A stretch of 63,667 bases of DNA, counting the filler, from Octopus bimaculoides (lineage: Eukaryota), in assembly GCF_001194135.2 (NCBI RefSeq). It is 4 parts of 4 records of this genome, joined end to end, with 100 filler letters (N's around TTAATTAATTAA, not from the genome) between each part and the next. Parts side by side here need not be neighbours in the genome. Positions count along the whole stretch, not along the records: positions 31,515 to 58,990 come from NC_069008.1; 3 more parts are not named here. One strand, 5' to 3'. The position numbers were made by a program, and so were the translations under genes. Position 1 is the first letter of the stretch; each line of letters begins with the position of its first letter. Of the stretch, positions 15,441 to 58,990 are shown in pieces. The notes under the pieces were generated by a model. The model ran no database searches and was not told the origin of the DNA. It was given only the letters and a program-made list of their open reading frames with translations.

Positions 15441-15879
15441 CTATGATGAGTGAACTTACTATGTAAAAACAAAAAGAAAAACAACTGCAGTATTTTCCCG
15501 GACCATTATTATCAAGGAATCACAAATATAGGACAATACGTAGAAACACGGCAACGTTGTATCTCTTGACAAAACAAAGGTAACAAGTGGAGAGTATTTC
15601 TAAGGTAAACACTTGTGTGCTGGCGGTGCAGCTGTACTCCGTCTCCGAATGCCGGAACCGATGCCCCATCAGAACGAGGAAGCAGCTCTGTAGGTGTTTC
15701 GGCCCCTTCCACCACGACACCAGAGCTTCCTAAGCTTCCTGCATTTCTCAAACGGGACGAATTTCTAGACCGATATTTCTTTGGGCCCTTGGACTCATAA
15801 GTCCGTTTGCCCGGTTTTCATGGCATATAAGTGACTAAAATCACAACATTCTCTCTGAACAAGTCGTTGGTCTGTTGCA

Positions 15880-34054: not shown

Positions 34055-34420
34055 AATAAGGCATCCTTTCTGGTTTTGAGAATCCCAATTTCTCAAGATT
34101 GATATTTAGTCAGTGTATTATGTATCCCAGTGCCTCAATAATTACAGGTAGAAACCTGAACTTGTAATTTGGATGTAGAGTAGCTGTAGATTCCTCAATA
34201 ATTTAGCATAGCTATTTTCTTTCTCGCATATCTTTAGCCTTATGTTAACATCCACTGGGCAGCTGATTTCCACAACTGTACCCAGTTTCTCTTCTCTATC
34301 CCCAATTACTATGTCAAGTCTATTATATTTATATCTTATTGAGGTTTTCACCGGGACATTCCACCAGTACACCTTTTTATTATGACTGGCTAGGGCTTCT
34401 ACCATACTGTAGGCTCTATT
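34055..34420 (-). mobile_element. Second, diverged 3' fragment of the R4/Dong-like family at 34530-35806
   Basis: YWWNVPVKTSIRYKYNRLDIVIGDREEKLGTVVEISCPVDVNI parallels the neighbouring copy. Confidence 0.8.
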
Positions 34421-34529
34421 TTTGTACGTATGTATGCATGTATTATGCGTAAATGTATGTATGTATGTATGTACATATGTATGTATGTACATATGTATGT
34501 ATGTGCAGATTTGTATGTTTTATGTATGT

Positions 34530-35806
34530 GTTCTCATGCATAGAATTACATATCTAGATATGCTCATATATATTTAAATGATAAGCTTCTAGAAAGTTTT
34601 ACAATTTTACAGATGGATTGGATCTGTAGCCTTCGAATTAGCTTTCTCCGTTCTGGTTTTGAGAAGCTTAATTACTCAAGATGGGTATTTAAGCAGTGTG
34701 TTACATATCCCAGGTCCCAAATAATTACAGGTATAAATCTGAACTTGTAATTTGGATAGGATAACTTCAGATTTCTCAATAGTTCAGCAAAGGTGTTTTC
34801 TTTTTCACTGATCTTCAGCTTTATGTTAACGTCTACTGGGCAACTAATTTCCACAACTGTGCACAGTTTCTCTTCTCTATCCCAAATCATTATATCAGGT
34901 CTGTTGTGCTTACATTTTATTGAGGTCTTCACTGAGACATTCCACCAATATTCCTTTTCATTATGATTGGCTATGGCTTCTACCATATTGTGGGTTCTTA
35001 TTTCTTTGTCGTCGGAATTATTTTTCTGGCGGATTTCATTATAGTGTGTCCTACCTACAACGTCACGTCTCATCGGCAGATATTACCGTGATGACATTTT
35101 CGGACAACTGCTTATGTTGTGGGTGATATCTTCAGTGTGAACTCCACAAAGTCTGCATCGGTTGTCACATTTTACGACTTTTCCCGCATCTCTTTCCCTT
35201 TTGTGCACCAGGTACTTGGTTGATATTTCCTGTTCCTGGATTTCAAAAGCATACCCTTCAAAGTGGGAGGTAGTAATCTGGCTATTGGTCCACGATAAAC
35301 TCCTTTGATGATCAATGTTAGTATCATCACGGAGCTTTCTACTACCATATCTATGCATAGTCTTCTGCTCATATAGGCTCATCCATTGATCAGACGATAC
35401 ATTGCGGTAGAGTTGTGCGACGTCTTTGGGCATGTATTCTGGGTTATCAGACAAAGAGTGTTGCTCAAGGAGCTGCCTTCCAAGTCTTATGATGTTAACA
35501 GCTTCATGTATGCAAAGTTGGTCAAGGGATGCACTTCGACACTTGTTGGTTAAAAGATGTTGCCGAAGGGATATGATGCGATATTCAAAGGCATTTTGGA
35601 TCGACGTTAAGCCTCTGCCGCCTTGTTTACGCTTTAGGTAGAGGCGGTCTACGTCACTGTTTATGTGGAAATTATGTGTGTTTGTTAGTATTTTCCGGGT
35701 TTTCACATTAATGGCTCGGATCTCTTCAAGCGTCCAATCAAGCAGCCCAAATGTTATGAGTAGTGGCACTGCAAACACATTGTGGGCCACTGTTTTATTG
35801 TATGTA
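34530..35806 (-). mobile_element. 5'-truncated R4/Dong-like LINE (thumb, CCHC knuckle, restriction-like endonuclease), frameshifted
   Basis: SDVDRLYLKRKQGGRGL; CRLCGVHTEDITHNISSC knuckle; HNRPDI...VEISCP...K..EK PD-(D/E)xK motif; (CATA)n tracts on both sides. Confidence 0.88.
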
Positions 35807-35841
35807 TTATGTATGTATGTATCTATCTATCTATCTATCTA

Positions 35842-35886
<45 letters not shown>

Positions 35887-35887
35887 A

Positions 35888-35946
<59 letters not shown>

Positions 35947-35947
35947 A

Positions 35948-36965
35948 CCGGTACCTGATAGTTATTGCAATAACTATCAGGTACCGGCCGGATGGCAATA
36001 TTTTTAATCTGAGGCGCCTGAAATCTGTAACAAAAACATCATCTCTACATATCTTTGAGCTGCAATATGCAGATAATACGGCACTTGTCAACCATGGCTC
36101 TGGTGGCCTTCAAGGGCTATTGGACCACATGTCAGACGCATACAGCCATGCTGGCCTAGTCATCAATACTAAGAAGACGGAAATCCTCCAACAGCCTTGT
36201 GCTCCCGACACCAACCCATACTCCTTCCATGTTGAAGATGCAACAATTACTAATGTTAACCAATTCACGTACCTTGGCTCAGTTTTCAACAACAGCCTTG
36301 ATCTGACAGACGATATTCATCGCCGTATTCGTCTTTGGTCGGCTAAGTACTCACTTCCTTCTCAGCAAAAACATCAACATCAGAACAAGAGTGGCTGTCT
36401 ACAATGCTCTTTGTGTTTCAATCCTGCTATATGTCTGAGAATCTTAGATGCCCTACCTGCATCATATCAAGATGCTCAAGCGGTTTCATATCTCTCGCCT
36501 TGAACAAGTCCTTGGCTTGCACTGGTGGAACAAGATCCCTCATACTGAGATACGTGACCGAACAAACAGCCAGCCATTGGAGGCAACAATCGCTAACCGC
36601 CAACTTAGATGGACAGAACATGTCATTCCAATGCCTTCAAATCGGTTGCCCCACCTTGTTATGCACGGCGAACTTGAAAATGGAAGACGCTCTATCGGTG
36701 GCCAGCACAAGCACCCCAAAGATCACCTGAAGGCAACACTGAAAGAATGTCATATCCCAGCCGACAGTCTCGAATCAATGGCTGCAGATCGCACACATAC
36801 AAGACTGGCACCACCAAAATCCAAGAAGATCTACTGCTGAGTGATGTGGCACACCACGCCCGGCGGCACGTGCAGAACCCTGGAAGTCAGCATCAGCAAG
36901 GTTTTACATGCTCCACCTGCGGAGGAATGTGTCTTAGTCATCAGAGGTCACATAACAACAAATGA
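35948..36965 (+). mobile_element. 5'-truncated RTE (BovB-like) LINE with a palindromic 5' junction
   Basis: RYRPDGNIFNLRRL, LQYADN, INTKKTEI, FTYLGS, RWTEHV.PM..NRLP, GRRSIGGQ and a C-terminal CSTC zinc-finger remnant; frameshifted. Confidence 0.92.
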
Positions 36966-39810: not shown

Positions 39811-39849
39811 GAAGTTAAACAACAACAACAACAACCCTACTGCTATCTC

Positions 39850-40470
39850 TACGATCCAACAAGATAACTTGTAATGAAGTCACCTGAACCGCTAAAATAA
39901 CAGCTAAAGGACACACCACATATTGTGACCCTGGATAAGATCGCAATGTCTTCGCTTACATGCCTTTTGACCAGGGCCAAGCTGGGGCTAGACAGCAACA
40001 ACAGCAACATGATCCCCACAGTAACTACTGCCAGCATCACAAGTACAATATCATCACAACAACCAGCACCACCAACAACAACAACAACGCCGCCACCACC
40101 ACCACCACCACCTACGCTATTATCGTCACCACCAGAATTACAATATCGTCTGCAGCAGTGACAGCTTCGCCACCAGTACAATGCCATTACCACAACGAGC
40201 AAGTTCGACACTACTACCACCACCACCACCACTGCCACCTGTGCTATAGCGCTGTCAACGCCAGCACCGCACAAGTACAATACCACGAAAACCACCACCA
40301 CCACTGTTACATCACAAACATAACCACCACCCCTACATACAACCACAAGTAGAATCCTAACACTGTCATCATAATCATGTATAATACCATCCACACCACT
40401 ACCAAGTACAGTGCTATCACCATTGTCGGCAAATTTCCTCTCACCATCACCGCTACCACCAACACGAACA
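39850..40470. repeat. Degenerate CAC/CAA/CAT trinucleotide low-complexity tract
   Basis: Explains the T/H/Q- and V/G-rich ORFs on both strands. Confidence 0.85.
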
Positions 40471-40937
40471 CCATTACTGACTCTGCCTCACTGACCCGAC
40501 TAACTCAGTGTTCACAAGTCAGTTAACAGAGTAATGATAAGGTACGTTTTATCCCGACTTATCTGCCACCAAATTCCAATCACATCAAAATAATGACCCT
40601 AACAAATATAAATACACGGAAACATACCGGGCTTGTTCAAGCGGAGAACAACGAAGGCGAACAACAAAGAAAGGATGTAAGCCGTCAGAAGTGAACAACA
40701 TAAGTGAAATGTCTAAAGACACAATCAGCTCCATATTTTTAATAAGCAGCCTTCTACTGTTTTGTCTTGGTATTTGGGGCGGAACGGTTAAAGCGGGCCT
40801 TCTTGATTAGGTATAAAAACAATAAAATCAGTGGGTTCGATTCTCATGTAGAGCAGCTGAAAAGTCCCTCGAGGGCGTCATTTTACATCGAGATTAAATA
40901 TATAGAGAAATATTAGTGACAGGCAGTATTAACACTG

Positions 40938-41187: not shown

Positions 41188-41329
41188 AAATCATACGAAG
41201 GTTTGTTGAGAGGCCTGGCTGGATGTCGTGAGAGGCCTGGCTGGAGGCCCAACCTTCCCAGTTCTTTTACAGGGATTAGAAAAACTGAAGGACCGTTGCA
41301 ATAATTGTGTGAATCTGAAAGGGGAATAT

Positions 41330-41872
41330 TCTTTTATTTTTTTTACTTGTTTCAGTCATTTGGCTGCGGTCATATTGGAGCACCACGTTAAAAGGTTTTA
41401 GTCAAGCAAATCGACCCCAGGATTCTTTGTAAGCCTAGTACTTATTCTATCGGACACTTTTGCCAAACCACTAAGTTACGGTGACATAAACACACCAGCA
41501 TCGGTTGTCAAGCGATNNNNNNNNNNNNNNNNNNNNNNNNNNNNNNNNNNNNNNNNNNNNNNNNNNNNNNNNNNNNNNNNNNNNNNNNNNNNNNNNNNNN
41601 NNNNNNNNNNNNNNNNNNNNNNNNNNNNNNNNNNNNNNNNNNNNNNNNNNNNNNNNNNNNNNNNNNNNNNNNNNNNNNNNNNNNNNNNNNNNNNNNNNNN
41701 NNNNNNNNNNNNNNNNNNNNNNNNNNNNNNNNNNNNNNNNNNNNNNNNNNNNNNNNNNNNNNNNNNNNNNNNNNNNNNNNNNNATACGACGGGCTTCTTT
41801 CAGTTTCCGTCAACCAAATCCACTCACAAGGCTTTGGGTCGGCCCAGCAAGATCTAAAGTAGAAGACACGTT
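41330..41872 (-). mobile_element. SINE family B split by a gap at its internal microsatellite
   Basis: Tail at 41330-41516; head-side segment atacgacgggcttctttcagtttccg at 41784-41872. Confidence 0.88.
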
Positions 41873-42296
41873 GGATAAAATCATAATTAACTGATCCTCC
41901 TGTATTTTCTTATACCCAAAGTCAGTAACTTTTCAACAACCCCTTGTATAAGGGTATGTATTCGTGTATAATGTAACCTAGAATTATTCCTTCTCTTGAC
42001 ATTTACGACATGCGGGTGGGGTAAAGAAGATCAGCATAGTTCTGAGGTTTGTCAGTTTGCTTCTTAACTACATTATTCGAGGAACAACGCCATTGCACGT
42101 TACCTTGTTTATGAGCTTTCTGAAATAGTCTCAGCTTGACCAATGACAGTTGTGAGAAATTTTATCGACAGAAACTTTGTAAAAGCACCTTATGTATGTA
42201 CATGTATGGATATGTGTGCGGGCGCGTGTGTGCGTGCGCGTGTGTGCGTGCGTACGTGTGTGTGTGTGCGTGTGTGTATTCATATATGTGGGTAAA

Positions 42297-42635
42297 GACC
42301 CCCCTTCGTTCATGAATGACCGTGAATTTGCACCTAGAAAGTTCCCCTCCCAAGCACAAGTCTGGGCAAGGTTGGTTATGGAAGACCAGCAGTCGCCCAT
42401 GCATACCAGCCTCCCCTCTCCACGCCACCAGTGTTATCCAAGGGAAAGGCAAAGGAGTCAATACAGCATGGCACTTGTGACGTCACAACTCATTTCTACA
42501 GCTGAGTGAAACTGGAGTAATGTGAAATAAAGTGCCTTGCTCAAGAACAAAACACACAGCCCGGTCTGAGAATCAAACTCACTATCTCATGATTGTGAGA
42601 CTGACACTCTAACCACTGAGCCCTGTGCCTTCATA
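42297..42635 (-). mobile_element. SINE family D, full length
   Basis: Homologous end to end with 53389-53715. Confidence 0.88.
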
Positions 42636-43197
42636 CATCTACATGACAGTATTAAAATACATCGAAAAAACACACTTTGAACTTTAATAAACCGAACGAC
42701 TGTGCCATATTTATGGCACACATGTGCCATAAATATCGCCATCCATTTTAGAGAAAAATTTGTAGTTTAGAATCAGTAGTTCTTTGACTGCNNNNNNNNN
42801 NNNNNNNNNNNNNNNNNNNNNNNNNNNNNNNNNNNNNNNNNNNNNNNNNNNNNNNNNNNNNNNNNNNNNNNNNNNNNNNNNNNNNNNNNNNNNNNNNNNN
42901 NNNNNNNNNNNNNNNNNNNNNNNNNNNNNNNNNNNNNNNNNNNNNNNNNNNNNNNNNNNNNNNNNNNNNNNNNNNNNNNNNNNNNNNNNNNNNNNNNNNN
43001 NNNNNNNNNNNNNNNNNNNNNNNNNNNNNNNNNNNNNNNNNNNNNNNNNNNNNNNNNNNNNNNNNNNNNNNNNNNNNNNNNNNNNNNNNNNATGCATGCT
43101 TGTATGTATATATGTATGCATATATGAAAGTGTGTATGTGTGTGCACATATATACATACATACACACACACATACATACATACATACATACATACAT

Positions 43198-44666: not shown

Positions 44667-44870
44667 AGGCGGTGAGCTGGCAGAATCGTTTGCACGCTTA
44701 GCGACATTGCGCCTGTCTTTACGTTCTGAGTTCAAATTCCGCCGAGGTCGTCTTTGCCTTTCATCCTTACGCGGTCGATAAAATAAGTACCAGTTGAACA
44801 CTTAGATCGATATAATCCACTTACTCACTTCCTCAGAATTGCTGGCCTTGTGTCAAAATTTTAAATCATT
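44667..44870 (+). mobile_element. SINE family A
   Basis: ggcggtgagctggcagaatcg...gagttcaaattccgccgagg...gccttgtgtcaaaat. Confidence 0.88.
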
Positions 44871-45376
44871 ATTATGTGCAAAAGAAAATACACAGGCTCT
44901 AGATGTAAATACGCCCCATTTTAGCCACAAATCCCTTCAAGTTCCTATGCACCGTGTTAAGCCCATACTAAATATTTCTTGTGTAGATCCCATATGAATG
45001 TTATGAATATTTCCATTGTTATCTGTTCTTCATTTCACCATCTATTTTCCACATGAATTTTTATTTACATTTACAAACGGTATGTAATATTAATAAAACT
45101 TCTTTAATTTCTAATACATGTACGACAGCAAAAAGAAACATTTAAGTGGATACTTTATCAAAACATGCCAAAAAGATTTCATGGTTTATAAAAACCAAAT
45201 ATGTGTGTGCTATGTAGTATGCTAGGTACGAGATGGTAACCAAATAGTTGAGTATGTGAAAGTATACAATACCCAGAACGCGCGCGCGCGCATTGATATG
45301 CTTCCTCATGCTGCATGATATGTATTTTTGTACCATACCAATAAAACAACATTTGTACTATCATTGACGAAGAAAA

Positions 45377-45382
45377 TTTATT
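45377..45382 (-). promoter_or_regulatory. Candidate polyadenylation signal AATAAA
   Basis: About 50 nt downstream of the TAG of the 307-aa ORF and followed by a GT-rich stretch; the hexamer is common in AT-rich DNA. Confidence 0.35.
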
Positions 45383-45429
45383 TTATCTATTGCTTTAATA
45401 GTGAAGTCTTCATCTCTATCTCACAAGGA

Positions 45430-46353
45430 CTATATGTTCTTCGCCAGTTTTGGAATCTTCATCATTTTCACCAGCTTTTCAGCTCTCGTTTCCTCCTCAT
45501 GTTCCGTCTTCTGTTTCACGTGCCAGTCTAAATCATTCAATCTCTGCATCACCTTTTCTTCCAGTTCCTTCAACTCAGGTAAATCCAAATCTTTCAAATT
45601 CCTCTTCTCAGTTATCTGCTGCTGTTGCTGTTCTTCTTGTATCTTTAGTCCATACATCCGCCGCTCTTTCAGTATCAGTTGTTCTTCCAATTCACTTACA
45701 TAATGTGTCACTCGTTCTTTGTGCTCCTTCATCACCTGTAATGACAATCGTATCTTCTTCCGCAATTTATCTTCTTCCTGTCCTAGTTCTTTCTTCTGTT
45801 TCACTAACCAATCCAAATCTTTCAACTCCAACTTCACCTGCTCAGCCAATTTATTAATTCTAGGTCTCTGCAGTTTTTCCTGTTTTTTCAGTTCATGCAT
45901 CACCTGCTCTTCAAGATTTTCTAATTCCTGCCTCACCGCTTCTTCCAGTTTATTCAGTTGCTGTCTCACCTGGTCTCCCTCTTCCTTTAGTCCTTGTATC
46001 ACCTGGTCTAGCATTTCTTTTTTCAATCGCATCGCATCTTTATCCCACTCAGTGTGCACTTTCTCTTCCTTCTCTGATTTCACTTCCTCTTCCGCCTCAG
46101 GTTTCACTTCCTCCTTCAGGTCTTCTTCCATGGAACGTTTATTAGCAATTTCTTCGTTAATAAAGAGATTTTCCTTTCTAGGAAAACGCATAATAAATGT
46201 TTCATCTGTAGAGTTCGGAGCAGGTCCGACAGAATTTACCCTGTTAGGACCCAAGAAGAAACTACTTAAACATCGTTTGGCCCAAGAAATGAAGCGAGCC
46301 AAGCGTCCCCTCCCGCCTGGTGTAGCTGCTAGGGACAATGGCGGTATTTGCAT
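45430..46353 (-). CDS. Uncharacterised 307-aa helical protein with 11-residue repeats
   Basis: 924-bp uninterrupted non-microsatellite ORF from the first ATG (MQIPP...) to TAG; the track's start at 46377 is TTG. No transposase or RT motifs. Could instead be the last exon of a longer gene. Confidence 0.75.
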   Translation of the reverse strand: MQIPPLSLAATPGGRGRLARFISWAKRCLSSFFLGPNRVNSVGPAPNSTDETFIMRFPRKENLFINEEIANKRSMEEDLKEEVKPEAEEEVKSEKEEKVHTEWDKDAMRLKKEMLDQVIQGLKEEGDQVRQQLNKLEEAVRQELENLEEQVMHELKKQEKLQRPRINKLAEQVKLELKDLDWLVKQKKELGQEEDKLRKKIRLSLQVMKEHKERVTHYVSELEEQLILKERRMYGLKIQEEQQQQQITEKRNLKDLDLPELKELEEKVMQRLNDLDWHVKQKTEHEEETRAEKLVKMMKIPKLAKNI

Positions 46354-46965
46354 TTCTTCAACCAAACACAAATGCAAAAACTAACTAAACCAAAACAAAA
46401 TATAAATTGAGACAAAAGCTGGAAGGAGAATATAATGGAGGGAAGATGGATAGGGAACAATAGACTGAAAAATTAATTAAAATGACATAATTATATAAAT
46501 GAAATCAAAAGACGAGATAAATAATCAAAATTATCATACAGTTAATGAACCAGGAAAATAGAAAAGGATACAGAAACAAAGAAAGAACTAGTTGATTGCT
46601 TTCAGTCAGTTAATTAAATTGAAACATATATGTTTGGTTCGATATATCTGTGAGCTAATCATTCAAACTTGCAAGTATATAAAGAGAGGAAAGAAACAAA
46701 GAAAAGTGGGGGAAAAGGGATAAAGAACTAAAAAAAATCAATTGCCTGATGAAGTCGTCAGCAAATTGTTGAAAACACGGTATAGAAATTAATTTAAATC
46801 AATTGAAAATAAGTAATAGATATACATATAAACCTGAGATCGATTTAAAACAGAACGGAGGTGAGCAAAATCTTCAAGTTGTACCTTTTGGAATGTTACG
46901 TCATAATCTCTCCTGCAAACCTTCATGACGTAATTACAGAGAATTTTTGATGAAAGTAGCAAACA

Positions 46966-47126
46966 GGCGCAGGCGCAGCTGTGTGGTAAGAAGCTTGCTT
47001 CCCAACCATATGGTTCCAGGTTCAGTCCCACTGTGTGTCACCTTGGGCAAGTGTCTTCTACTACAGCATCGGACCGACCAAAACCTTGTGAGTGGATTTG
47101 GTAAACGGAAACTGAAAGAAGCTTGT

Positions 47127-47225
<99 letters not shown>

Positions 47226-47460
47226 ATATCTGTGTGTGTCTTTGTGTCTGTGTTTGTCCCCCATCACCGCTTGACAACTGGCATTGGTGTGTTTACATCC
47301 CCGTAACTTAGCCGTTCGGTAAAAGAGATCGATAGAATAAATACTATGCTTACAAAGAATAAGTCATTGGGTCGATTTGTTCGACTAAAAAAAAAACCCT
47401 TTAATGCGGTGCTCCAGAATGGCCGCAGTCAAATGACTTAAACAAATAAAAGAATAAAAG
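46966..47460 (+). mobile_element. Complete SINE family B: tRNA head, CORE-like segment, (TA)n(TG)n, about 210-bp tail
   Basis: ggcgcag...gtgtggtaagaagc, ggttcagtcc, gtcaccttgggcaagtgtctt (similar to the MIR/CORE gtgaccttgggcaagt motif), microsatellite at about 47127-47245, tail ending aaagaataaaag. Confidence 0.92.
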
Positions 47461-47719
47461 AACTGTCATTTAATATCTAATTCGAAGAGAACGCAATACA
47501 CGGTAACATTTTGTGTTCAAATCCCGTTGAATTCATATTTGCAATTCGCCAGCTGAAGAGTATAAAGCAGTACTCAGTGGAGTCCATGTAATATAACAAA
47601 TTATAGTCTGCCCGCTGGATCTTTGAACAATAGAGATTCTTTATAACACCAGACCAGTGGGTATATGAATAACATCCACCACCACCACCATCAACCCACC
47701 TTGAGGTTTTTTTGAATAA

Positions 47720-47915
47720 TCCTTTCTACTGGAAACACAAGGCCTCAAATTTGGGGGGAGGGGTTAAGTCGATTACATCGACCCCAGTGCATAACCTGTA
47801 CTAATTTTATCGACCCAGAAAGGATGAAAAGTAAAGTCGACCTCGGCGGAATTTGAACTCAGAACGGCTAAGCATTTCGCCCGGTGTGCTAACGATTCTT
47901 ACAGCTCGCCGCCAT
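47720..47915 (-). mobile_element. SINE family A with short internal deletion
   Basis: aggatgaaa...gtcgacctcggcggaatttgaactcag...gctcgccgcc. Confidence 0.88.
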
Positions 47916-48759
47916 AGGTTTTTTATTTAATGACAACTATATTCCTGGAATAAAGTCATTTCACATTTAATTCCCATTACAAAATTACCCGGAACCTGTG
48001 TAATTTTATATATTAAATAGCTTGAGGTTATTTGAGCAAACCGAACAACAACAGCAGTAACAATGTTAGCTAATCTCACTCTTCTACATCACTTTAAGCT
48101 TGATCATTCTGTCTCCACANNNNNNNNNNNNNNNNNNNNNNNNNNNNNNNNNNNNNNNNNNNNNNNNNNNNNNNNNNNNNNNNNNNNNNNNNNNNNNNNN
48201 NNNNNNNNNNNNNNNNNNNNNNNNNNNNNNNNNNNNNNNNNNNNNNNNNNNNNNNNNNNNNNNNNNNNNNNNNNNNNNNNNNNNNNNNNNNNNNNNNNNN
48301 NNNNNNNNNNNNNNNNNNNNNNNNNNNNNNNNNNNNNNNNNNNNNNNNNNNNNNNNNNNNNNNNNNNNNNNNNNNNNNNNNNNNNNNNNNNNNNNNNNNN
48401 NNNNNNNNNNNNNNNNNNNNNNNNNNNNNNNNNNNNNNNNNNNNNNNNNNNNNNNNNNNNNNNNNNNNNNNNNNNNNNNNNNNNNNNNNNGGTGACTCAA
48501 AATAATAGATATGCGTTCTGTGTGCTCAAATAGGTGTGCCACTAAAATTCCAGTTAGAACAGCGGCTGAAGTTGCGTTTGTGTGAATGTCTTGTTCAAAA
48601 AATGGCTAACAGTGGCTTCTCTTTGAGTCAATAGATATAGATTAAAGTTGTGAGGAAAGGCAAACAATTAGTCAAGGTAGGACTAGAGCGTTTGATTTCA
48701 TTTAATTCAATTTACAAATTTACCTACATAACGAATGGTAAAATAGTACAAAACTGGTA

Positions 48760-49430: not shown

Positions 49431-49989
49431 GGGTGTTTTCATAGAGCAGTGTGTTGTTCTTTATTATTAACTGAGGAAAACAAAAATATTTGTAAATGTA
49501 ACTAATATATATCAGTAAGTCATTTAGAAACTGAAAGATGAGAATATGGCATTTCGGATCTAGTTTGTTTCATTCACAAAATGAGCCCCCTTTAATTTTG
49601 GTCAGATTGCTTTCAATTTTGGTGTATCGATGCAACTCTGGATTTTGATTACGATCAACCAATTACTTTATTTCGTGAACTAAAGAATCTGATGTTATTA
49701 GGAATTAAAGTTGGGAATTTTGTGTAATTTTAGCTAAACAGACAACTTGTTACTATGACAACCGCACGTTTTGTTGGGTTTCATTTCAGCCGCATGTTGT
49801 GTTGATTTACCCGCGTTTTGTTTTAATAAAACTTTAATAAAACTTTATAAATTAGAATTTTATTATAGATATTTTTCGTCATATTTTTTATTTATAGCAA
49901 AAGTCGTTTGCAATGTTTACACAGTTTCTTGACATTATGAAGGTGAATGGAATATGTGAACTTAGTACACAACCGCACACCTACACTTT

Positions 49990-50915
49990 TGTGATTTGTC
50001 AGCTTTCCCACTTAATAAGACTTTGGTTTTTGCTAAGTTGACTCTAAGGCCCTTCGATTCTACATCTTGCTTCCACACCCTAAACTTTGTCTCTAGTTCC
50101 AGCAGTGACTCAGCTATTAGAGCATAGAGGAGCTCCCAGGGGCAGCCTGTCTTGAATTCCTCTGTTATTGCCTGAAGGACTATGATGAATAAGAGGGGGA
50201 TGAGGACTGATCCTTGGTGAATCCCTCCTTCTACCCAGAACTCTTCACTATACTTGTTGCCAAACCTCACCTTACTGACGGCATCTTGGTACAGGGCTTG
50301 TACAGCTCTTACCAACCACTCGTCTATCCCCAGTTTCCACATTGACCACCAGATAAGGGATCGGGGAATCCTGTCAAAAGCTTTCTCCAAGTCAACAAAA
50401 GCCAAATACAGAGGTTTATCTTTGGCTAGATATTTCTTCTGCAGTTGCCTTACCAGAAATATAGCATCAGTGGTGCTTCTGCCTGGCACAGAACCAAACT
50501 GCATCTCATCTAGGCTAACTCTCTCCCTAATTAGTTGAGCTATGAGCCTCTTTATAACTTTCATCACCTGATCCAATAATTTGATACCCCTGTAGTTATT
50601 TCTCTCTAAAGCATCACCATTACCTTTGTAGCAGTTGACTATGGTGCTGCTACACCAGTCGCTGGGTATGACTTCTTCATGAACTACCTAATTTACGATA
50701 TGGGTGACAAGACCATAACCCACACTGCGCGACATTTTAAGCATCTCAACGGTGATTCCTGATGGGCCAGGTGCTTTCCCTGTCTTCATATCCTTAATTG
50801 CTTTATCTACCGGGGTACTGTTGATTTGGGTATCTGGTCTCTCAACTGGGTCAACCTTTGGCAGACTCTCCTCCTCCCATTCATTCTCCACACTCAGCAG
50901 TCTTTCGTAATAGTA
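49990..50915 (-). mobile_element. RTE-clade LINE RT fragment, catalytic DD deleted
   Basis: KAPGPSG, NYRGIKLL, QFG..PGRSTTDAIF, FVDLEKAFDR, GIHQGSVL.PLLF, CPWELLYA-LIAES, GLRVNLAKTK. Confidence 0.92.
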
Positions 50916-51955: not shown

Positions 51956-52789
51956 CTTAATCTATGCTGTAACCTTTTAATCAAAACATGACAACGTGGG
52001 TAGGGGTTGATATCTTAATATTTCTGGTGGTCTTAAGTATAAAAAAAATTATTAAAGATTTATATAGAACTACATTCAGAGTATGTCTATAAGCTACTGN
52101 NNNNNNNNNNNNNNNNNNNNNNNNNNNNNNNNNNNNNNNNNNNNNNNNNNNNNNNNNNNNNNNNNNNNNNNNNNNNNNNNNNNNNNNNNNNNNNNNNNNN
52201 NNNNNNNNNNNNNNNNNNNNNNNNNNNNNNNNNNNNNNNNNNNNNNNNNNNNNNNNNNNNNNNNNNNNNNNNNNNNNATGGGAGGAGGATAAAATAGTAT
52301 CAGTGGTTATAATGGTGACAGGAGCGGTGTGATGTGTGATGCTGAGGTGATGGTGGTAATAGTGGTGTTGATGACAGTGTTAGTTGTGTGATGGTGGTAT
52401 TGCAGTGGTTATACTGGCTGTGGTGGTGAAAGTGACTGTCAAGGTAACCGTTATGATAACGTTGATGGCGGTGTATGTGGTTGATGTGGAAGCAATGACA
52501 GTGCTGCTGATGATGTTGGTGGTTGTGGTGGTGATTGTGATATGGTGGTGGTGGTGGTGGTCGTCGTCGTCGTCGTCGTTGTCACTGTAGTGCTGCTCCT
52601 GCTGGTTTGGCGGATGTGTGAGCTCTCTGAGTGCTTTTCTAGTTATCTTTAAAATGTATGTAGATAGTTGTATACAGAAGTGCTGATCACTTAAAGTGGA
52701 TGGAACTTGTAGAAGAGGGAGACCCAAGAAGATAAGGGATAAAGTATTGAAGATTGATCTCAAGACAGTGACCTTTACAAAGGACTGAG

Positions 52790-53090: not shown

Positions 53091-53388
53091 GACACTAATC
53101 CCTAATTACAATCAATCATATTCAGTGAATTTTAGTATTAGATGGGAAAAAAAGGGTTTGTCTGTGTTCTACTTTCGTGGGGACCTATAAACAACTACTG
53201 TAGTCATTTTATTATCATACACAGCATCAGATGTGAAGTTTTTGATGGCAGTTACCAACTTAATCCACCTTCAGTATGAAATGAGACTCATCCTGAGAAT
53301 GGGTCTATGCATTCCACCAAAGTCAATGAAACTGATTGTGTAGTACATAGTACTCTCGTCACTTCATTATGATGTACCATAGAGTGAA

Positions 53389-53715
53389 GACATGGCTCAG
53401 TGGTTAGAGCATCAGGCTCACAATCATGAGGTAGTGTGTTTGATTCCCATTCCAGGCTGTGTGTTGTGTTCTTGAGCAAGACACTTTATTTCACATTGCT
53501 CCAGTTCATTCAGCTGTAGAAATGAGTTGTGACGTCACTAGTGCCAAGCCATATTGGTCTTTGTCTTTTCCTTGGACAACATCAGTGATGTGGAGAGGGG
53601 AGGCTGGTATGCATGAGTGACTGCTGGTCTTACATAAACAACCTTGCCCAGACTTGTACCTCAGCAGGGTACTTTCTAAGTGCAATCCCATGGTCATTCA
53701 TGACCAAAAGGGGTC
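53389..53715 (+). mobile_element. SINE family D, full length
   Basis: Head tggctcagtggttagagc...gtttgattccc; middle ttgagcaagacactttatttcacattgctccag; 3' end ggtcattcatgacc. Confidence 0.88.
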
Positions 53716-53764
53716 ATTACTCTTTTACAATAGAATGGAACTTTGCTGTATATATAACCTTTAA

Positions 53765-54770: not shown

Positions 54771-55034
54771 AGGCTTATTCTGCAAGCATATGTGCAGCAA
54801 AAATGTTTTTTTCAATTTTTTTGTTTGACTGCAAATGTTTCCTTCGATTTGTTTTTAGTTTATTCTTTCTGCATTTTGCATCAAAAAATTTTTAATAATT
54901 GAACTTTCTCCCATTAACACCCGATTCCTGGAGTTNNNNNNNNNNNNNNNNNNNNNNNNNNNNNNNNNNNNNNNNNNNNNNACTTTGCTTTGTTTTTTTG
55001 GGTTTTTTTTTTTTTTCATTTTAGTATAAATTTA

Positions 55035-55495
55035 AGGCAGCAAGCTAACAGAATTGTTAGCATGCCAGGTAAAAAGTTTGGCAGCATTTTGTCTGCCTTC
55101 CTGTTCTGAGTTCAAATTCTGCTGAGGTCGACTTTTCCTTTCATCCTTTTGGGGTCGATAAAATAAGGACCAATTGAGTACTGGAGTTGATATAATCGAC
55201 TATCCCCCTCCCCCAAGTTTCAAGCCTTGTACTTACAGTAGAAAGTATTATTATTATTGTTGTTGTTGTTGTTGTTGTTGTTGTTATCATTATCATTATT
55301 ATTAGGGCATTGAGCTGGCAGAATCATTAGCACGTCAGGCATGCTTTATATTCTGAGTTCAAATTCCACCAAGGTCGACTTTGCCTTTCCTTCTTTCAGG
55401 GTCAATAAAACAAGTTCCACTGGAGTACTGGGGTCATGTAATCGATTTACACCCTCCGCTGGAATTGCTAGCTTTGTGCCAAACTTTGAAATCAT
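55035..55495 (+). mobile_element. Two diverged SINE family A copies separated by (TTG)n/(TTA)n
   Basis: Bodies at about 55035-55250 and 55305-55495. Confidence 0.8.
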
Positions 55496-55959
55496 TATTT
55501 TAGTATAATTAATTATGTAACAATCACCATAATCCTTTACCCTCCAAATTCAGTTCCATTCATGTGGGAAATCTTGAACTGAACGGTAGATTGAAGTGTT
55601 TGTATATGTAAGCTCAAAATGGTGGCATCAAACCAGAAAGCGGTAAATTTTTCTGGTAAAGTAGACATTTGAATGTGAAAAGGGCAGTCCAAAAACCAAA
55701 GCCCTACCAACGATGTTTGAAAAAGAGGTGTTAGAGATATATAGCATAGAGAAAAAGTGGAAGTTCCAACAGAACAGCCTACTGAGGGGTACAAACCAAA
55801 TCTGTGGCTGGTGCAAAGTCCTGGCCAAATCAAGGGTGACATGATAGCGAAACAGTGAAGTAGACAGAGTTATAAAAGCAAAGAAACAGGACTTGTGAAG
55901 ATTGAAAGGATGATGGTAGCAACAGCAGCAGAGAATTATATCAGATAGCTTGAAGAGAA

Positions 55960-58731: not shown

Positions 58732-58990
58732 CTCTTTTACTCTTTTACTCTTTTACTTGTTTCAGTCTTTTGACTGTGGCCATGCTGGAGCACCGCCTTT
58801 AGTCGAGCAAATCGACCCCAGGACTTATTCTTTAGAAGCCTAGTACTTATTCTATCGATCTCTTTTGCCGAACCACTAAGTTACGGGGACATAAACACAC
58901 CAGCATTGGTTGTCAAGCGATGTTGGGGGGACAAACACACACATACAAACATATACACACACATACATATATATATATATACATATATAC
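58732..58990 (-). mobile_element. SINE family B tail with (GTAAAAGA)3 terminus and internal microsatellite running into a gap
   Basis: tcttttac x3; gagcaccgcc...tcgaccccagg...aagttacggggac...gttgtcaagcgat. Confidence 0.9.

What the first reader, a model, noticed from the sequence alone, without database searches (positions are those of the whole stretch)
45430..46353. Intact orphan ORF built from in-register 11-residue amphipathic repeats
Seen: seven consecutive 11-mers at 46017-45787 (EMLDQVIQGLK, EEGDQVRQQLN, KLEEAVRQELE, NLEEQVMHELK, KQEKLQRPRIN, KLAEQVKLELK, DLDWLVKQKKE) with hydrophobics mostly at positions 2, 6 and 10, and a duplicated 22-mer at 45567-45502 (ELEEKVMQRLN-DLDWHVKQKTE). 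The ORF is unbroken while all neighbouring transposon ORFs are decayed. Established: 11/22-mer helices characterise hendecad coiled coils and lipid-binding proteins (apolipoproteins, perilipins, synucleins, group 3 LEA). Inferred: a lineage-specific structural or lipid-surface-binding protein; I do not recognise the family.
Basis: partly seen in the sequence, partly recalled or inferred. Interest (0 to 1): 0.7.

Follow-up and report, generated by a model that had tools for sequence, protein, structure and literature searches.

The report
Octopus-only gene for 11-residue-repeat helical protein
The open reading frame is a real, selectively maintained gene found only in octopuses; it encodes a long alpha-helical rod built from 11-residue repeats, is already annotated as a "hypothetical protein", and has no known function.

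Summary
Window 46353-45430 (-) is an intact 307-codon ORF in Octopus bimaculoides chromosome CM046628.1. Residues 113-189 are seven in-register 11-mers. Sequence identity is 31-33% at offsets of 11, 22 and 33 residues, against about 8% at other offsets. The hydrophobic period is 3.64 residues. A 22-residue module is duplicated.

It is a gene, not a chance or transposon ORF:
- Intact single-exon orthologues exist in O. vulgaris, O. sinensis and a fourth octopod.
- dN/dS is 0.05-0.43, and only in-frame indels occur.
- The longest ORF in 300 random sequences was 208 codons.

Two shorter paralogues in O. vulgaris share an N-terminal signature: a basic amphipathic helix followed by NSVGPxPNST...RFPRK..LFINE. 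Nothing outside Octopus matched in Pfam, PDB sequences, Foldseek or a profile search of 1.84 billion proteins.

AlphaFold2 predicts one helix across residues 91-250 with pLDDT above 90. I read it as a self-associating, nearly straight hendecad coiled-coil rod, targeted through its conserved N-terminus. A lipid-surface-binding 3-11 helix remains possible, because its composition falls inside the published range for such helices. Expression and function could not be tested. The public O. bimaculoides annotation (253 aa) probably omits 54 conserved N-terminal residues.

The parts
45430..46353 (-). Complete coding sequence: 307 codons plus the TAG stop at 45432-45430, in a single exon.
   Evidence: Intact collinear orthologues in O. 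vulgaris (L004), O. sinensis (L008) and a Logan octopod (L001-3). dN/dS 0.05-0.43. Permutation test.
46381..46383 (-). In-frame TAG 10 codons upstream of the ATG. It closes the reading frame on the 5' side and is conserved in the orthologues.
   Evidence: Read from the sequence and from the alignment.
46261..46314 (-). Residues 14-31, GRGRLARFISWAKRCLSS: a basic amphipathic helix with net charge +5. Residues 1-49 contain no Asp or Glu.
   Evidence: AF2 helix 14-30 at low confidence. Hydrophobic moment 0.41. F21-I22-S23 are invariant across paralogues. The same helix is predicted in paralogue P0004.
46150..46260 (-). Residues 32-68: the family signature motif, F..(5-6)..N-S/V-V/L-G-P-x-P-x-S-T...I-x-R/C-F/Y-P...L-F-I/V-N/T-E. 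It is predicted disordered yet is the part best conserved among paralogues.
   Evidence: Invariant columns F32, N40, G43, P44, P46, S48, T49, I54, P58, L63, F64, E67. pLDDT below 50. Codons 1-54 have dN/dS 0.13-0.15 between O. bimaculoides and O. vulgaris/O. sinensis.
46021..46149 (-). Residues 69-111: an acidic Glu/Lys linker containing about 2.4 copies of an 8-residue (24-bp) repeat, EEVKPEAE / EEVKSEKE / EKV...
   Evidence: TRF period 24 at 46057-46113. Composition: 35% D+E.
45787..46017 (-). Residues 113-189: seven in-register hendecads with consensus x-L-E-E-Q-V-x-Q-E-L-K. The hydrophobic seam is at positions 2, 6 and 10.
   Evidence: TRF 33-bp period at 45885-45976. AF2 pLDDT 92-96.
45604..45786 (-). 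Residues 190-250: continuation of the same predicted helix with less regular periodicity (about 3.58), ending in a poly-Gln run. This stretch is absent from both paralogues.
45433..45579 (-). Residues 259-307: the C-terminal helical module that follows the break at LDLPE. It contains the second copy of the 22-mer (45567-45502, ELEEKVMQRLNDLDWHVKQKTE) and the tail LVKMMxIPKLAKNI. It is shared with paralogue P0004.
45377..45399 (-). Candidate polyadenylation signals: ATTAAA at 45399-45394 and AATAAA at 45382-45377, which lie 30 and 47 nt after the stop. Both sit in the best-conserved flank.
   Evidence: The 100 nt after the stop are 95% identical to O. vulgaris, against about 91% for the upstream flank. 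AATAAA is kept in all three species aligned (O. bimaculoides, O. vulgaris, the Logan octopod); ATTAAA is also kept.

Best explanation
This is a genuine single-coding-exon gene restricted to octopuses. It encodes a 307-residue, mostly alpha-helical protein.

Shown here:
- The ORF is kept intact and under purifying selection in four species.
- It belongs to a small family of three loci in O. vulgaris. The shared core is an N-terminal basic amphipathic helix, a conserved Pro/Ser-rich linear motif, and a short hendecad helix.
- This copy grew to about 200 helical residues by internal duplications of 8-, 11-, 33- and 22-residue units.

Inferred:
- The hydrophobic seam (L/V/M at positions 2, 6 and 10 of each 11-mer, equivalent to a-e-h of a hendecad) runs almost straight along the helix.
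- Two or more chains therefore pair side by side into an un-supercoiled or slightly right-handed coiled-coil rod.
- The conserved N-terminal 67 residues act as the targeting or partner-binding end, so the protein works as a rod-like scaffold or tether.
For: Gene reality:
- The window is O. bimaculoides GCA_001194135.2 CM046628.1, where the gene is annotated.
- Orthologues: O. vulgaris at 90% amino-acid identity, O. sinensis XP_029653309.1, and a Logan octopod at 76%.
- Nei-Gojobori dN/dS is 0.17 (bimaculoides-vulgaris), 0.05 (vulgaris-sinensis, 17 synonymous against 4 non-synonymous changes) and 0.37-0.43 against the Logan species.
- In a permutation that keeps the observed substitution spectrum, there were 31 amino-acid changes against 50.2 +/- 3.5 expected, reached by 0 of 20000 permutations. 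Only 3% and 0.8% of permutations avoided a stop codon.
- Differences by codon position are 23:10:40. CDS indels are 3 and 9 nt only, while the flanks carry 50-100 gap columns.
- The ORF length exceeds every one of 300 random sequences.

Helix and periodicity:
- AF2 predicts helices at 91-250 (pLDDT above 90) and 259-297. Paralogue P0004 has the same layout.
- Period 3.64, with 0 of 1000 shuffles reaching the peak.
- The hydrophobic moment is coherent at 98.2 degrees and not at 102.9 degrees.
- 15 of 21 seam positions are hydrophobic in all four species, and 4 of the 7 variable seam positions are L/V/M swaps.
- Paralogue P0004 has three clean hendecads, EMMEDLVQVLK / RQEKQLEQELE / DLEKQLNQDLK.
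- 11/3 = 3.67 residues per turn is the definition of hendecad, slightly right-handed coiled coils (PMC4786415).

N-terminal signature: the invariant columns across paralogues lie in residues 5-67.
Against: - No oligomer was modelled or measured. The tools here fold single chains only.
- Composition and hydrophobic moment equally fit published lipid-binding 11-mer helices.
- No expression evidence could be obtained. The Logan contigs are collinear with the genome and are bounded by repeats, so they are probably genomic reads.
- The targeting role of the N-terminus is inferred from conservation alone.
- dN/dS against the fourth species is fairly relaxed (about 0.4). In the last 57 codons, non-synonymous changes outnumber synonymous ones (19.5 against 2.5).
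Confidence: 0.5

Rival explanations
1. Lipid- or membrane-surface-binding protein. The 11-mers fold as a 3-11 amphipathic helix that lies flat on a phospholipid monolayer or bilayer, such as a lipid droplet, lipoprotein or organelle membrane. This is how CCT-alpha domain M, perilipins, apolipoproteins and alpha-synuclein behave. The N-terminal basic amphipathic helix would help with docking.
For: - 11-residue periodicity with 22- and 33-residue super-repeats.
- Residues 112-188 have hydrophobic fraction 0.34, charged fraction 0.43 and a 3-11 hydrophobic moment of 0.41.
- These values fall inside the range for lipid-binding 11-mer helices in Table 1 of PMC5889406: hydrophobic fraction 0.32-0.47, charged fraction 0.15-0.49, moment 0.26-0.48. 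CCT-alpha, at 0.32 / 0.49 / 0.48, is closest.
- The N-terminal helix carries +5 charge with a moment of 0.41.
Against: - No profile match to Apolipoprotein, Perilipin, Synuclein or LEA_4, even at E <= 10.
- The non-polar face is only three positions wide (about 65-100 degrees) and is flanked by Glu/Gln rather than interfacial Lys/Arg.
- The helix is net neutral to slightly acidic.
- There is only one Pro in 160 helical residues, so there is no apolipoprotein-style proline punctuation.
- AF2 predicts the helix very confidently without any lipid. This is weak evidence.
Confidence: 0.2
2. Organelle-imported coiled-coil protein. The acid-free, Arg-rich N-terminal amphipathic helix would be a cleavable mitochondrial-type presequence rather than a permanent anchor, and the helical rod would act inside the organelle.
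For: - Residues 1-49 contain no Asp or Glu, six Arg/Lys, and abundant Ser, Ala, Leu and Pro.
- An amphipathic helix is predicted at 14-30.
- An R-x-[L/F] followed by S/A/M occurs at the same alignment column in all three paralogues: RCL|S, RFL|M, RSF|A. From my own knowledge this resembles the R-3 processing motif.
Against: - No targeting predictor could be run, and the motif is short and degenerate.
- The first 13 residues are Pro-rich.
- The segment after the putative cleavage site is the most conserved part. That fits a functional mature N-terminus or linear motif at least as well as a presequence.
Confidence: 0.1
3. Single alpha-helix (SAH) spacer. The charged helix would be stable as a monomer through i/i+4 Glu-Lys salt bridges and act as a rigid spacer without oligomerising.
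For: About 44% charged residues plus 7-15% Gln. AF2 predicts one uninterrupted 160-residue helix in a monomer model, with pTM of only 0.26.
Against: L/I/V/M/F/W make up 27-31% of the helix. They are phased at 3.64 residues to form a continuous seam that is conserved across species. From general knowledge, SAH domains lack such a seam.
Confidence: 0.07
4. Not a functional host gene: either a chance ORF in low-complexity DNA, or a decaying transposon ORF1/gag-type coiled-coil protein.
For: - The ORF sits among LINE reverse-transcriptase fragments and SINE-like repeats.
- From general knowledge, LINE ORF1 proteins contain coiled coils.
- No expression data were obtained.
Against: - The selection tests and in-frame-only indels argue against it, as does the ORF length against random sequences.
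- There is a single copy in the piece and in each orthologous locus.
- Only about five distinct proteins match across 5.8 billion clustered and 1.84 billion representative sequences. A transposon ORF would be multicopy.
- No Transposase_22 or gag profile hit, and no viral fold match.
- The nearest reverse-transcriptase fragment lies 5' of the ORF, which is the wrong order for ORF1-ORF2, and it did not align within the 10 kb O. vulgaris flank.
Confidence: 0.03

Closest known systems
Hendecad (11/3) coiled coils, for example the right-handed stalk segments of ATP-synthase peripheral stalks, tetrabrachion, and the stutter regions of intermediate filaments
   Same: The hydrophobic seam repeats every 11 residues at 3.64-3.67 residues per turn over at least 77 residues. 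The core is L/V/M and the flanks are charged. The predicted helix is long and uninterrupted (definition in PMC4786415).
   Different: No sequence or fold-search relationship to any solved coiled coil; the best Foldseek hit was vimentin at E 2.2. Oligomeric state, strand orientation and knobs-into-holes packing were not tested. The N-terminal signature motif has no counterpart among these proteins.
CCT-alpha domain M, the 11-mer membrane-sensing amphipathic helix of CTP:phosphocholine cytidylyltransferase
   Same: Glu/Lys-rich 11-mer repeats with nearly the same hydrophobic fraction, charged fraction and hydrophobic moment: 0.34 / 0.43 / 0.41 here against 0.32 / 0.49 / 0.48.
   Different: No catalytic domain and no sequence homology. 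The helix here is three times longer (about 160-200 residues against 59) and is net neutral. Lipid binding was not tested.
Exchangeable apolipoproteins, perilipins, alpha-synuclein and group 3 LEA proteins (11/22/33-mer 3-11 helices)
   Same: 11-residue periodicity with 22- and 33-residue super-repeats that arose by tandem duplication.
   Different: No match to PF01442, PF03036, PF01387 or PF02987 at E <= 10. The non-polar face is narrower. There is no proline punctuation, no evident signal peptide, and no PAT domain or four-helix bundle.
LINE-1 ORF1p and other transposon coiled-coil ORF1/gag proteins
   Same: A disordered N-terminus followed by a coiled coil, located in transposon-rich DNA.
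   Different: No RRM/CTD or Transposase_22 match. It is single-copy and syntenic across species, under purifying selection, and not followed by a reverse-transcriptase ORF.

Membership tests
Hendecad coiled coil (structural class) | Hydrophobic core positions recur with a period of 11/3 = 3.67 residues rather than 3.5 | tested here: met
   The period peaks at 3.64, with power 2.52 against 0.17 at 3.50, and 0 of 1000 shuffles reach it. The hydrophobic moment is coherent at 98.2 degrees (0.37) and lost at 102.9 degrees (0.07).
Hendecad coiled coil (structural class) | A continuous alpha-helix across the repeats | tested here: met
   AF2 helix 91-250 with pLDDT 92-96 over residues 111-230. This is a prediction, not a measurement.
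Hendecad coiled coil (structural class) | Two or more helices packed by knobs-into-holes (oligomerisation) | not testable with these tools
   Only single-chain prediction was available. pTM 0.26 shows no intramolecular packing.
Exchangeable apolipoproteins (Pfam PF01442) | Profile match to the apolipoprotein repeat family | tested here: not met
   Not listed at E <= 10 for the window protein or any of the five family members.
Exchangeable apolipoproteins (Pfam PF01442) | Tandem 22-mers punctuated by proline; a secreted protein with a signal peptide | tested here: not met
   There is one Pro (P164) in the 160-residue helix and only two 22-mer copies, 95 residues apart. By inspection the N-terminus, MQIPPLSLAATPGGRGR, has no long hydrophobic core; no signal-peptide predictor was run.
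Perilipins (PF03036) | PAT domain plus 11-mer region plus C-terminal four-helix bundle | tested here: not met
   No Pfam hit. AF2 shows no helical bundle. No Foldseek hit in the PDB.
Synucleins (PF01387) and group 3 LEA (PF02987) | Profile match, or KTKEGV-type or TAQAAKEKAGE-type 11-mers | tested here: not met
   No hit at E <= 10. The repeat consensus here is x-L-E-E-Q-V-x-Q-E-L-K.
Lipid-binding 3-11 amphipathic helices (functional class) | Physicochemical envelope: hydrophobic fraction, charged fraction and hydrophobic moment | tested here: inconclusive
   0.34 / 0.43 / 0.41 lies within the range in Table 1 of PMC5889406. Coiled coils share these values, so the test does not discriminate.
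Lipid-binding 3-11 amphipathic helices (functional class) | Lipid-dependent folding and lipid binding | not testable with these tools
   This needs liposome or lipid-droplet assays.
LINE ORF1p / gag-like transposon protein | Profile match (Transposase_22, gag), multicopy, and placed upstream of a reverse-transcriptase ORF | tested here: not met
   No Pfam hit. One copy per locus. A handful of database relatives, all syntenic orthologues or paralogues. The reverse-transcriptase fragment lies on the 5' side of the ORF.
Single alpha-helix (SAH) domain | Charged E/K/R helix without a phased hydrophobic seam | tested here: not met
   27-31% L/I/V/M/F/W, phased at 3.64 residues and conserved.

The most novel reading that the evidence does not exclude
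An octopod-specific protein family whose 11-mer helix coats a lipid or membrane surface, evolved independently of perilipins, apolipoproteins, synucleins and CCT-alpha. It would be guided by a new N-terminal targeting signature (a basic helix plus NSVGPxPNST...RFPRK..LFINE) and would have lengthened recently through internal duplication of hendecad modules.
Probability: 0.15. Interest if true: 0.55.

Novelty: new member of a known kind. Interest (0 to 1): 0.3.

Why it matters
Taxon-restricted genes are thought to contribute to cephalopod novelties, yet almost none have been characterised. This one offers:
- a compact case with a single exon of 0.9 kb;
- a well-defined repeat architecture;
- clear evidence of selection;
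- a visible growth history, from paralogues of about 180 residues to a 307-residue copy by internal duplication.

It is also one of the cleaner natural runs of consecutive hendecads in an animal protein, which could interest coiled-coil structural biologists. On a practical level, the analysis corrects three public gene models. The O. bimaculoides protein lacks 54 conserved N-terminal residues, and two O. vulgaris paralogue models carry doubtful long introns. Otherwise this is an ordinary uncharacterised coiled-coil gene.

Tried and rejected
Searches that found nothing:
- Pfam at E <= 10 on the protein and on all five family members gave only noise (Baculo_PEP_C 0.07, CorA, QIL1 and similar).
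- PDB sequence searches with the single protein, the full-length profile and the N-terminal profile gave nothing credible.
- Foldseek of the AF2 model against the PDB and against viral BFVD structures gave no hit with E <= 0.001.
- A profile search of 1.84 billion representative proteins returned only Octopus proteins.
- An N-terminal-only profile search of the 5.8-billion set returned nothing, not even the query's own orthologues. I treat that run as uninformative rather than negative.
- Rfam and tRNA scans of the piece found nothing.

Expression and literature:
- An exact-sequence look-up of the 307-residue protein in public assemblies found no record.
- The Logan contigs for the fourth species are collinear with the genome and end in repeats, so they are probably genomic.
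- The SRA runs could not be tied to a species or library type through the literature.
- Literature searches on accessions and on the RefSeq name gave no paper.

Ideas dropped:
- A conserved 5'-UTR splice acceptor just upstream of the ATG. The Py-tract plus AG is present in the three orthologues aligned and at the P0004 locus, but there is no AG at the P0005 locus.
- Transposon ORF1 origin, rejected on copy number, synteny, selection and gene order.
- A link with the neighbouring C2H2 zinc-finger genes in O. vulgaris. There is no sequence similarity, only adjacency.
Full report
**Where the window comes from.** The piece is Octopus bimaculoides assembly GCA_001194135.2, chromosome CM046628.1, at about 7.28-7.30 Mb. 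It is AT-rich, full of microsatellites, and has five assembly gaps. It also holds SINE-like repeats and fragments of LINE reverse transcriptase: 49962-50576 (-) matches RVT_1 at E 1.4e-18, and weaker pieces lie at 35083-36503.

**Checking the observation.**
- The minus strand carries an ORF from ATG 46353 to the TAG at 45432-45430, 307 codons. An in-frame TAG lies 10 codons upstream.
- It is the longest ATG-ORF in the piece. In 300 first-order Markov random sequences the longest ORF averaged 118 +/- 20 codons, with a maximum of 208.
- Within residues 112-188, self-identity is 33%, 31% and 32% at offsets 11, 22 and 33, against about 8% elsewhere.
- The hydrophobic power spectrum peaks at 3.64 residues. 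Power is 2.52 there against 0.17 at 3.50, and 0 of 1000 shuffles reach it.
- The hydrophobic moment summed over all 77 residues stays coherent at 98.2 degrees per residue (0.37) and vanishes at the heptad angle of 102.9 degrees (0.07).
- Positions 2, 6 and 10 carry L/V/M/I in 5, 6 and 6 of the 7 repeats. The fifth repeat is degenerate and holds the only proline.
- At the DNA level, TRF finds a 33-bp period at 45885-45976 and a 24-bp period (8 residues) at 46057-46113.
- The 22-mer at 45567-45502 is a diverged copy of hendecads 6-7 at 45852-45787, matching at 13/22 residues and 46/66 bases.

**Is it a gene?** Homology searches found only Octopus proteins.
- O. vulgaris CAI9742533.1 (90% identity) and O. 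sinensis XP_029653309.1, named 'uncharacterized protein PF11_0207-like'.
- A 301-residue protein from five Logan samples of an unidentified octopod (76% identity).
- The O. bimaculoides annotation itself, at 253 residues.
- Two shorter O. vulgaris paralogues, P0004 (181 aa) and P0005 (180 aa).

All orthologous CDSs are single, uninterrupted and collinear.

Selection evidence:
- Nei-Gojobori dN/dS is 0.17 for bimaculoides-vulgaris, 0.14 for bimaculoides-sinensis, 0.05 for vulgaris-sinensis (17 synonymous against 4 non-synonymous) and 0.37-0.43 against the fourth species.
- NG estimates are biased by transition excess in a Glu/Lys/Gln-rich gene, so I also permuted the observed substitutions over the CDS while keeping their spectrum.
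- Bimaculoides-vulgaris shows 31 amino-acid changes against 50.2 +/- 3.5 expected, reached by 0 of 20000 permutations. Against the Logan species the figures are 68 against 78.5 +/- 4.3 (p about 0.01).
- Only 3% and 0.8% of permutations escaped a stop codon.
- Differences by codon position are 23:10:40.
- CDS indels are 3 and 9 nt only, whereas the flanks have 50-100 gap columns.
- The 100 nt after the stop are the best-conserved flank and carry ATTAAA and AATAAA at +30 and +47 nt.

I conclude with about 0.9 confidence that this is a functional protein-coding gene. Expression could not be tested here. The Logan contigs run collinear with the genome through an upstream SINE and end in repeats, so they are most likely genomic reads. 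The exact 307-residue product is not on record elsewhere.

**The start codon.** The public O. bimaculoides model starts at Met55. Codons 1-54 have dN/dS of 0.13-0.15 against O. vulgaris/O. sinensis (0.30 against the Logan species) and are the region best conserved with the paralogues. The real start is therefore ATG 46353, as annotated in O. vulgaris and O. sinensis.

**Architecture.** AF2, using a five-sequence alignment, gives mean pLDDT 71.6. It predicts:
- a low-confidence helix at 14-30;
- disorder at 31-90;
- one helix from 91 to 250, with pLDDT 92-96 for most of it;
- a break at 251-258 (RNLKDLDLPE);
- a helix at 259-297.

pTM is 0.26, so no tertiary packing is predicted. Paralogue P0004 gives the same plan in miniature.

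Composition by segment:
- Residues 1-49 have no acidic residue and a net charge of +6.
- Residues 69-111 are acidic.
- The helical part is about 44% charged, 7-15% Gln, 27-31% L/I/V/M/F/W, and net neutral.

The columns invariant across all three paralogous lineages cluster in residues 5-67: P5, L6, R15, L18, F21, I22, S23, F32, N40, G43, P44, P46, S48, T49, I54, P58, L63, F64, E67. The family signature is therefore the N-terminal basic amphipathic helix plus a predicted-disordered Pro/Ser-rich motif, not the repeats.

The paralogues have only about three hendecads and one C-terminal module. The window gene has about 125 extra residues between them, including the duplicated 22-mer. This copy therefore lengthened by internal duplication before the four species split.

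**Comparison with known families.**
- Pfam at E <= 10 shows only noise for all five members. There is no Apolipoprotein, Perilipin, Synuclein, LEA_4 or Transposase_22.
- PDB sequence and profile searches were negative.
- Foldseek against the PDB (best hit vimentin, E 2.2) and against BFVD was negative.
- The profile search of 1.84 billion representative proteins returned three proteins, all Octopus.
- No paper mentions the accessions.

**Mechanism.** A period of 11/3 = 3.67 residues, slightly above the 3.63 of a relaxed alpha-helix, is what defines hendecad, slightly right-handed coiled coils (PMC4786415).
- The seam here (V6, L10, L2' = a, e, h) is three positions wide on the 11/3 wheel, at 196, 229 and 262 degrees. 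It is flanked by Glu/Gln/Lys.
- 15 of 21 seam positions are hydrophobic in all four species, and most changes are L/V/M swaps.

I therefore favour a self-associating, nearly straight coiled-coil rod with the conserved N-terminus as the targeting or partner-binding end (confidence 0.5). Hydrophobic fraction 0.34, charged fraction 0.43 and moment 0.41 fall within Table 1 of PMC5889406, and CCT-alpha at 0.32 / 0.49 / 0.48 is closest. Against it are the narrow non-polar face, the lack of interfacial basic residues, net neutrality and the absence of proline punctuation (confidence 0.2).

Other readings:
- The N-terminus also looks like a mitochondrial-type presequence. It is acid-free and Arg-rich, with an aligned R-x-L/F motif in all paralogues. 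This is untested (confidence 0.1).
- An SAH reading conflicts with the phased hydrophobic seam (confidence 0.07).
- A chance or transposon ORF is essentially refuted (confidence 0.03). The gene is single-copy and syntenic, it is under selection, it has a handful of database relatives, and the nearest reverse-transcriptase fragment lies 5' of it and did not align within the 10 kb O. vulgaris flank.

**Verdict.** Its interpretation is half right: lineage-specific and family unknown are correct, but structural versus lipid-binding remains undecided. The object is an already annotated but uncharacterised, Octopus-restricted hendecad-repeat protein gene. That makes it a new member of a known kind, of modest interest (0.3). 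Its value lies as a tidy example of a young gene family growing by internal repeat duplication, and as a correction to three public gene models.

Noticed in passing
window 46192-46353 (-): The public O. bimaculoides gene model (253 aa, starting at Met55) leaves out 54 N-terminal codons. These are under purifying selection (dN/dS 0.13-0.15 against O. vulgaris/O. sinensis) and are conserved in the paralogues. O. vulgaris and O. sinensis models start at the upstream ATG.
   Followed up: yes
L005 15704-16297 (O. vulgaris OX597841.1, about 85 kb from the orthologue): At the locus of paralogue P0004, the ancestral start (MLPLSPKTIPYRK) is cut by an in-frame TGA at 15743-15745. The annotation bypasses it with a 5.7-kb intron and a two-residue first exon. 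The locus may be N-terminally truncated or decaying. It is flanked by C2H2 zinc-finger genes at L005 4241-5014 and 19949-21505.
   Followed up: partly
L007 10001-10537 (O. vulgaris OX597842.1): Paralogue P0005 is annotated across 44 kb with a distant last exon. The genome nevertheless holds an intact single-exon ORF of 178 residues ending ...ETRKYIESWKSGQLYF, which resembles the C-terminus of P0004. The long intron is probably an annotation artefact.
   Followed up: partly
window 45433-46353, compared with the flanks 45330-45429 and 46354-47110: Between O. bimaculoides and O. vulgaris, third codon positions differ at 13% (40/306) while the aligned flanks differ at only 8% (66/814). Possible causes are constrained flanks, alignment bias from indel-rich flanks, or purine-transition bias at Glu/Lys/Gln codons. 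This is unexplained.
   Followed up: no
window 45433-45603 (-), codons 251-307: The C-terminal module shows more non-synonymous than synonymous change against the Logan octopod (19.5 against 2.5; NG omega about 1.8). The DLDWHVKQK motif becomes DLEMNVKRG there. Counts are small, but this may be relaxed or positive selection.
   Followed up: no
window 49962-50576 (-); 35083-35790 (-); 35763-36503 (+): Decayed LINE fragments. They match RVT_1 at E 1.4e-18, zf-RVT at 0.0015 and RVT_1 at 3e-4, and one is interrupted by a (TATC)n microsatellite at 35808-35946.
   Followed up: partly
window 34064-34421 and 34647-35003: A direct repeat pair of about 358 bp at 81% identity. Each copy carries a similar ORF of 116 or 133 aa (...NHNxKxYWWNVxVKTSIxxKxNRxDIxIxDREEKLxTVVEISCPVDVNI...). 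These are probably two copies of a transposon-encoded domain with no convincing Pfam match.
   Followed up: no
window 41327-41516, 47211-47462, 58738-58990; also 44668-44873, 47715-47913, 55085-55499; 42292-42633 / 53385-53720: At least three families of short interspersed repeats (75-84% identity) surround the gene and recur many times in the O. vulgaris flanks. The 5' end of the Logan contig lies in one that has a tRNA-like B-box (gatcgaaccc). No tRNA or Rfam family reaches threshold.
   Followed up: partly
window 41517-41783, 42792-43091, 48120-48490, 52100-52277, 54936-54981: Runs of N (assembly gaps of 46-371 bases) lie inside the piece. ORFs listed across them are artefacts.
   Followed up: yes
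window 40167-40915: A block of about 750 bp is 87% identical to O. vulgaris L004 12756-13535, downstream of the gene. It overlaps an ACC/ACA/AAC triplet-repeat region (39818-40239) that has long low-complexity ORFs on both strands. It may be conserved non-coding sequence or a shared repeat.
   Followed up: no
tool behaviour: The word-indexed homology search with the 72-column N-terminal alignment returned no hit at E <= 10. It did not return even the orthologues from which the alignment was built. That run cannot be read as evidence of absence.
   Followed up: no
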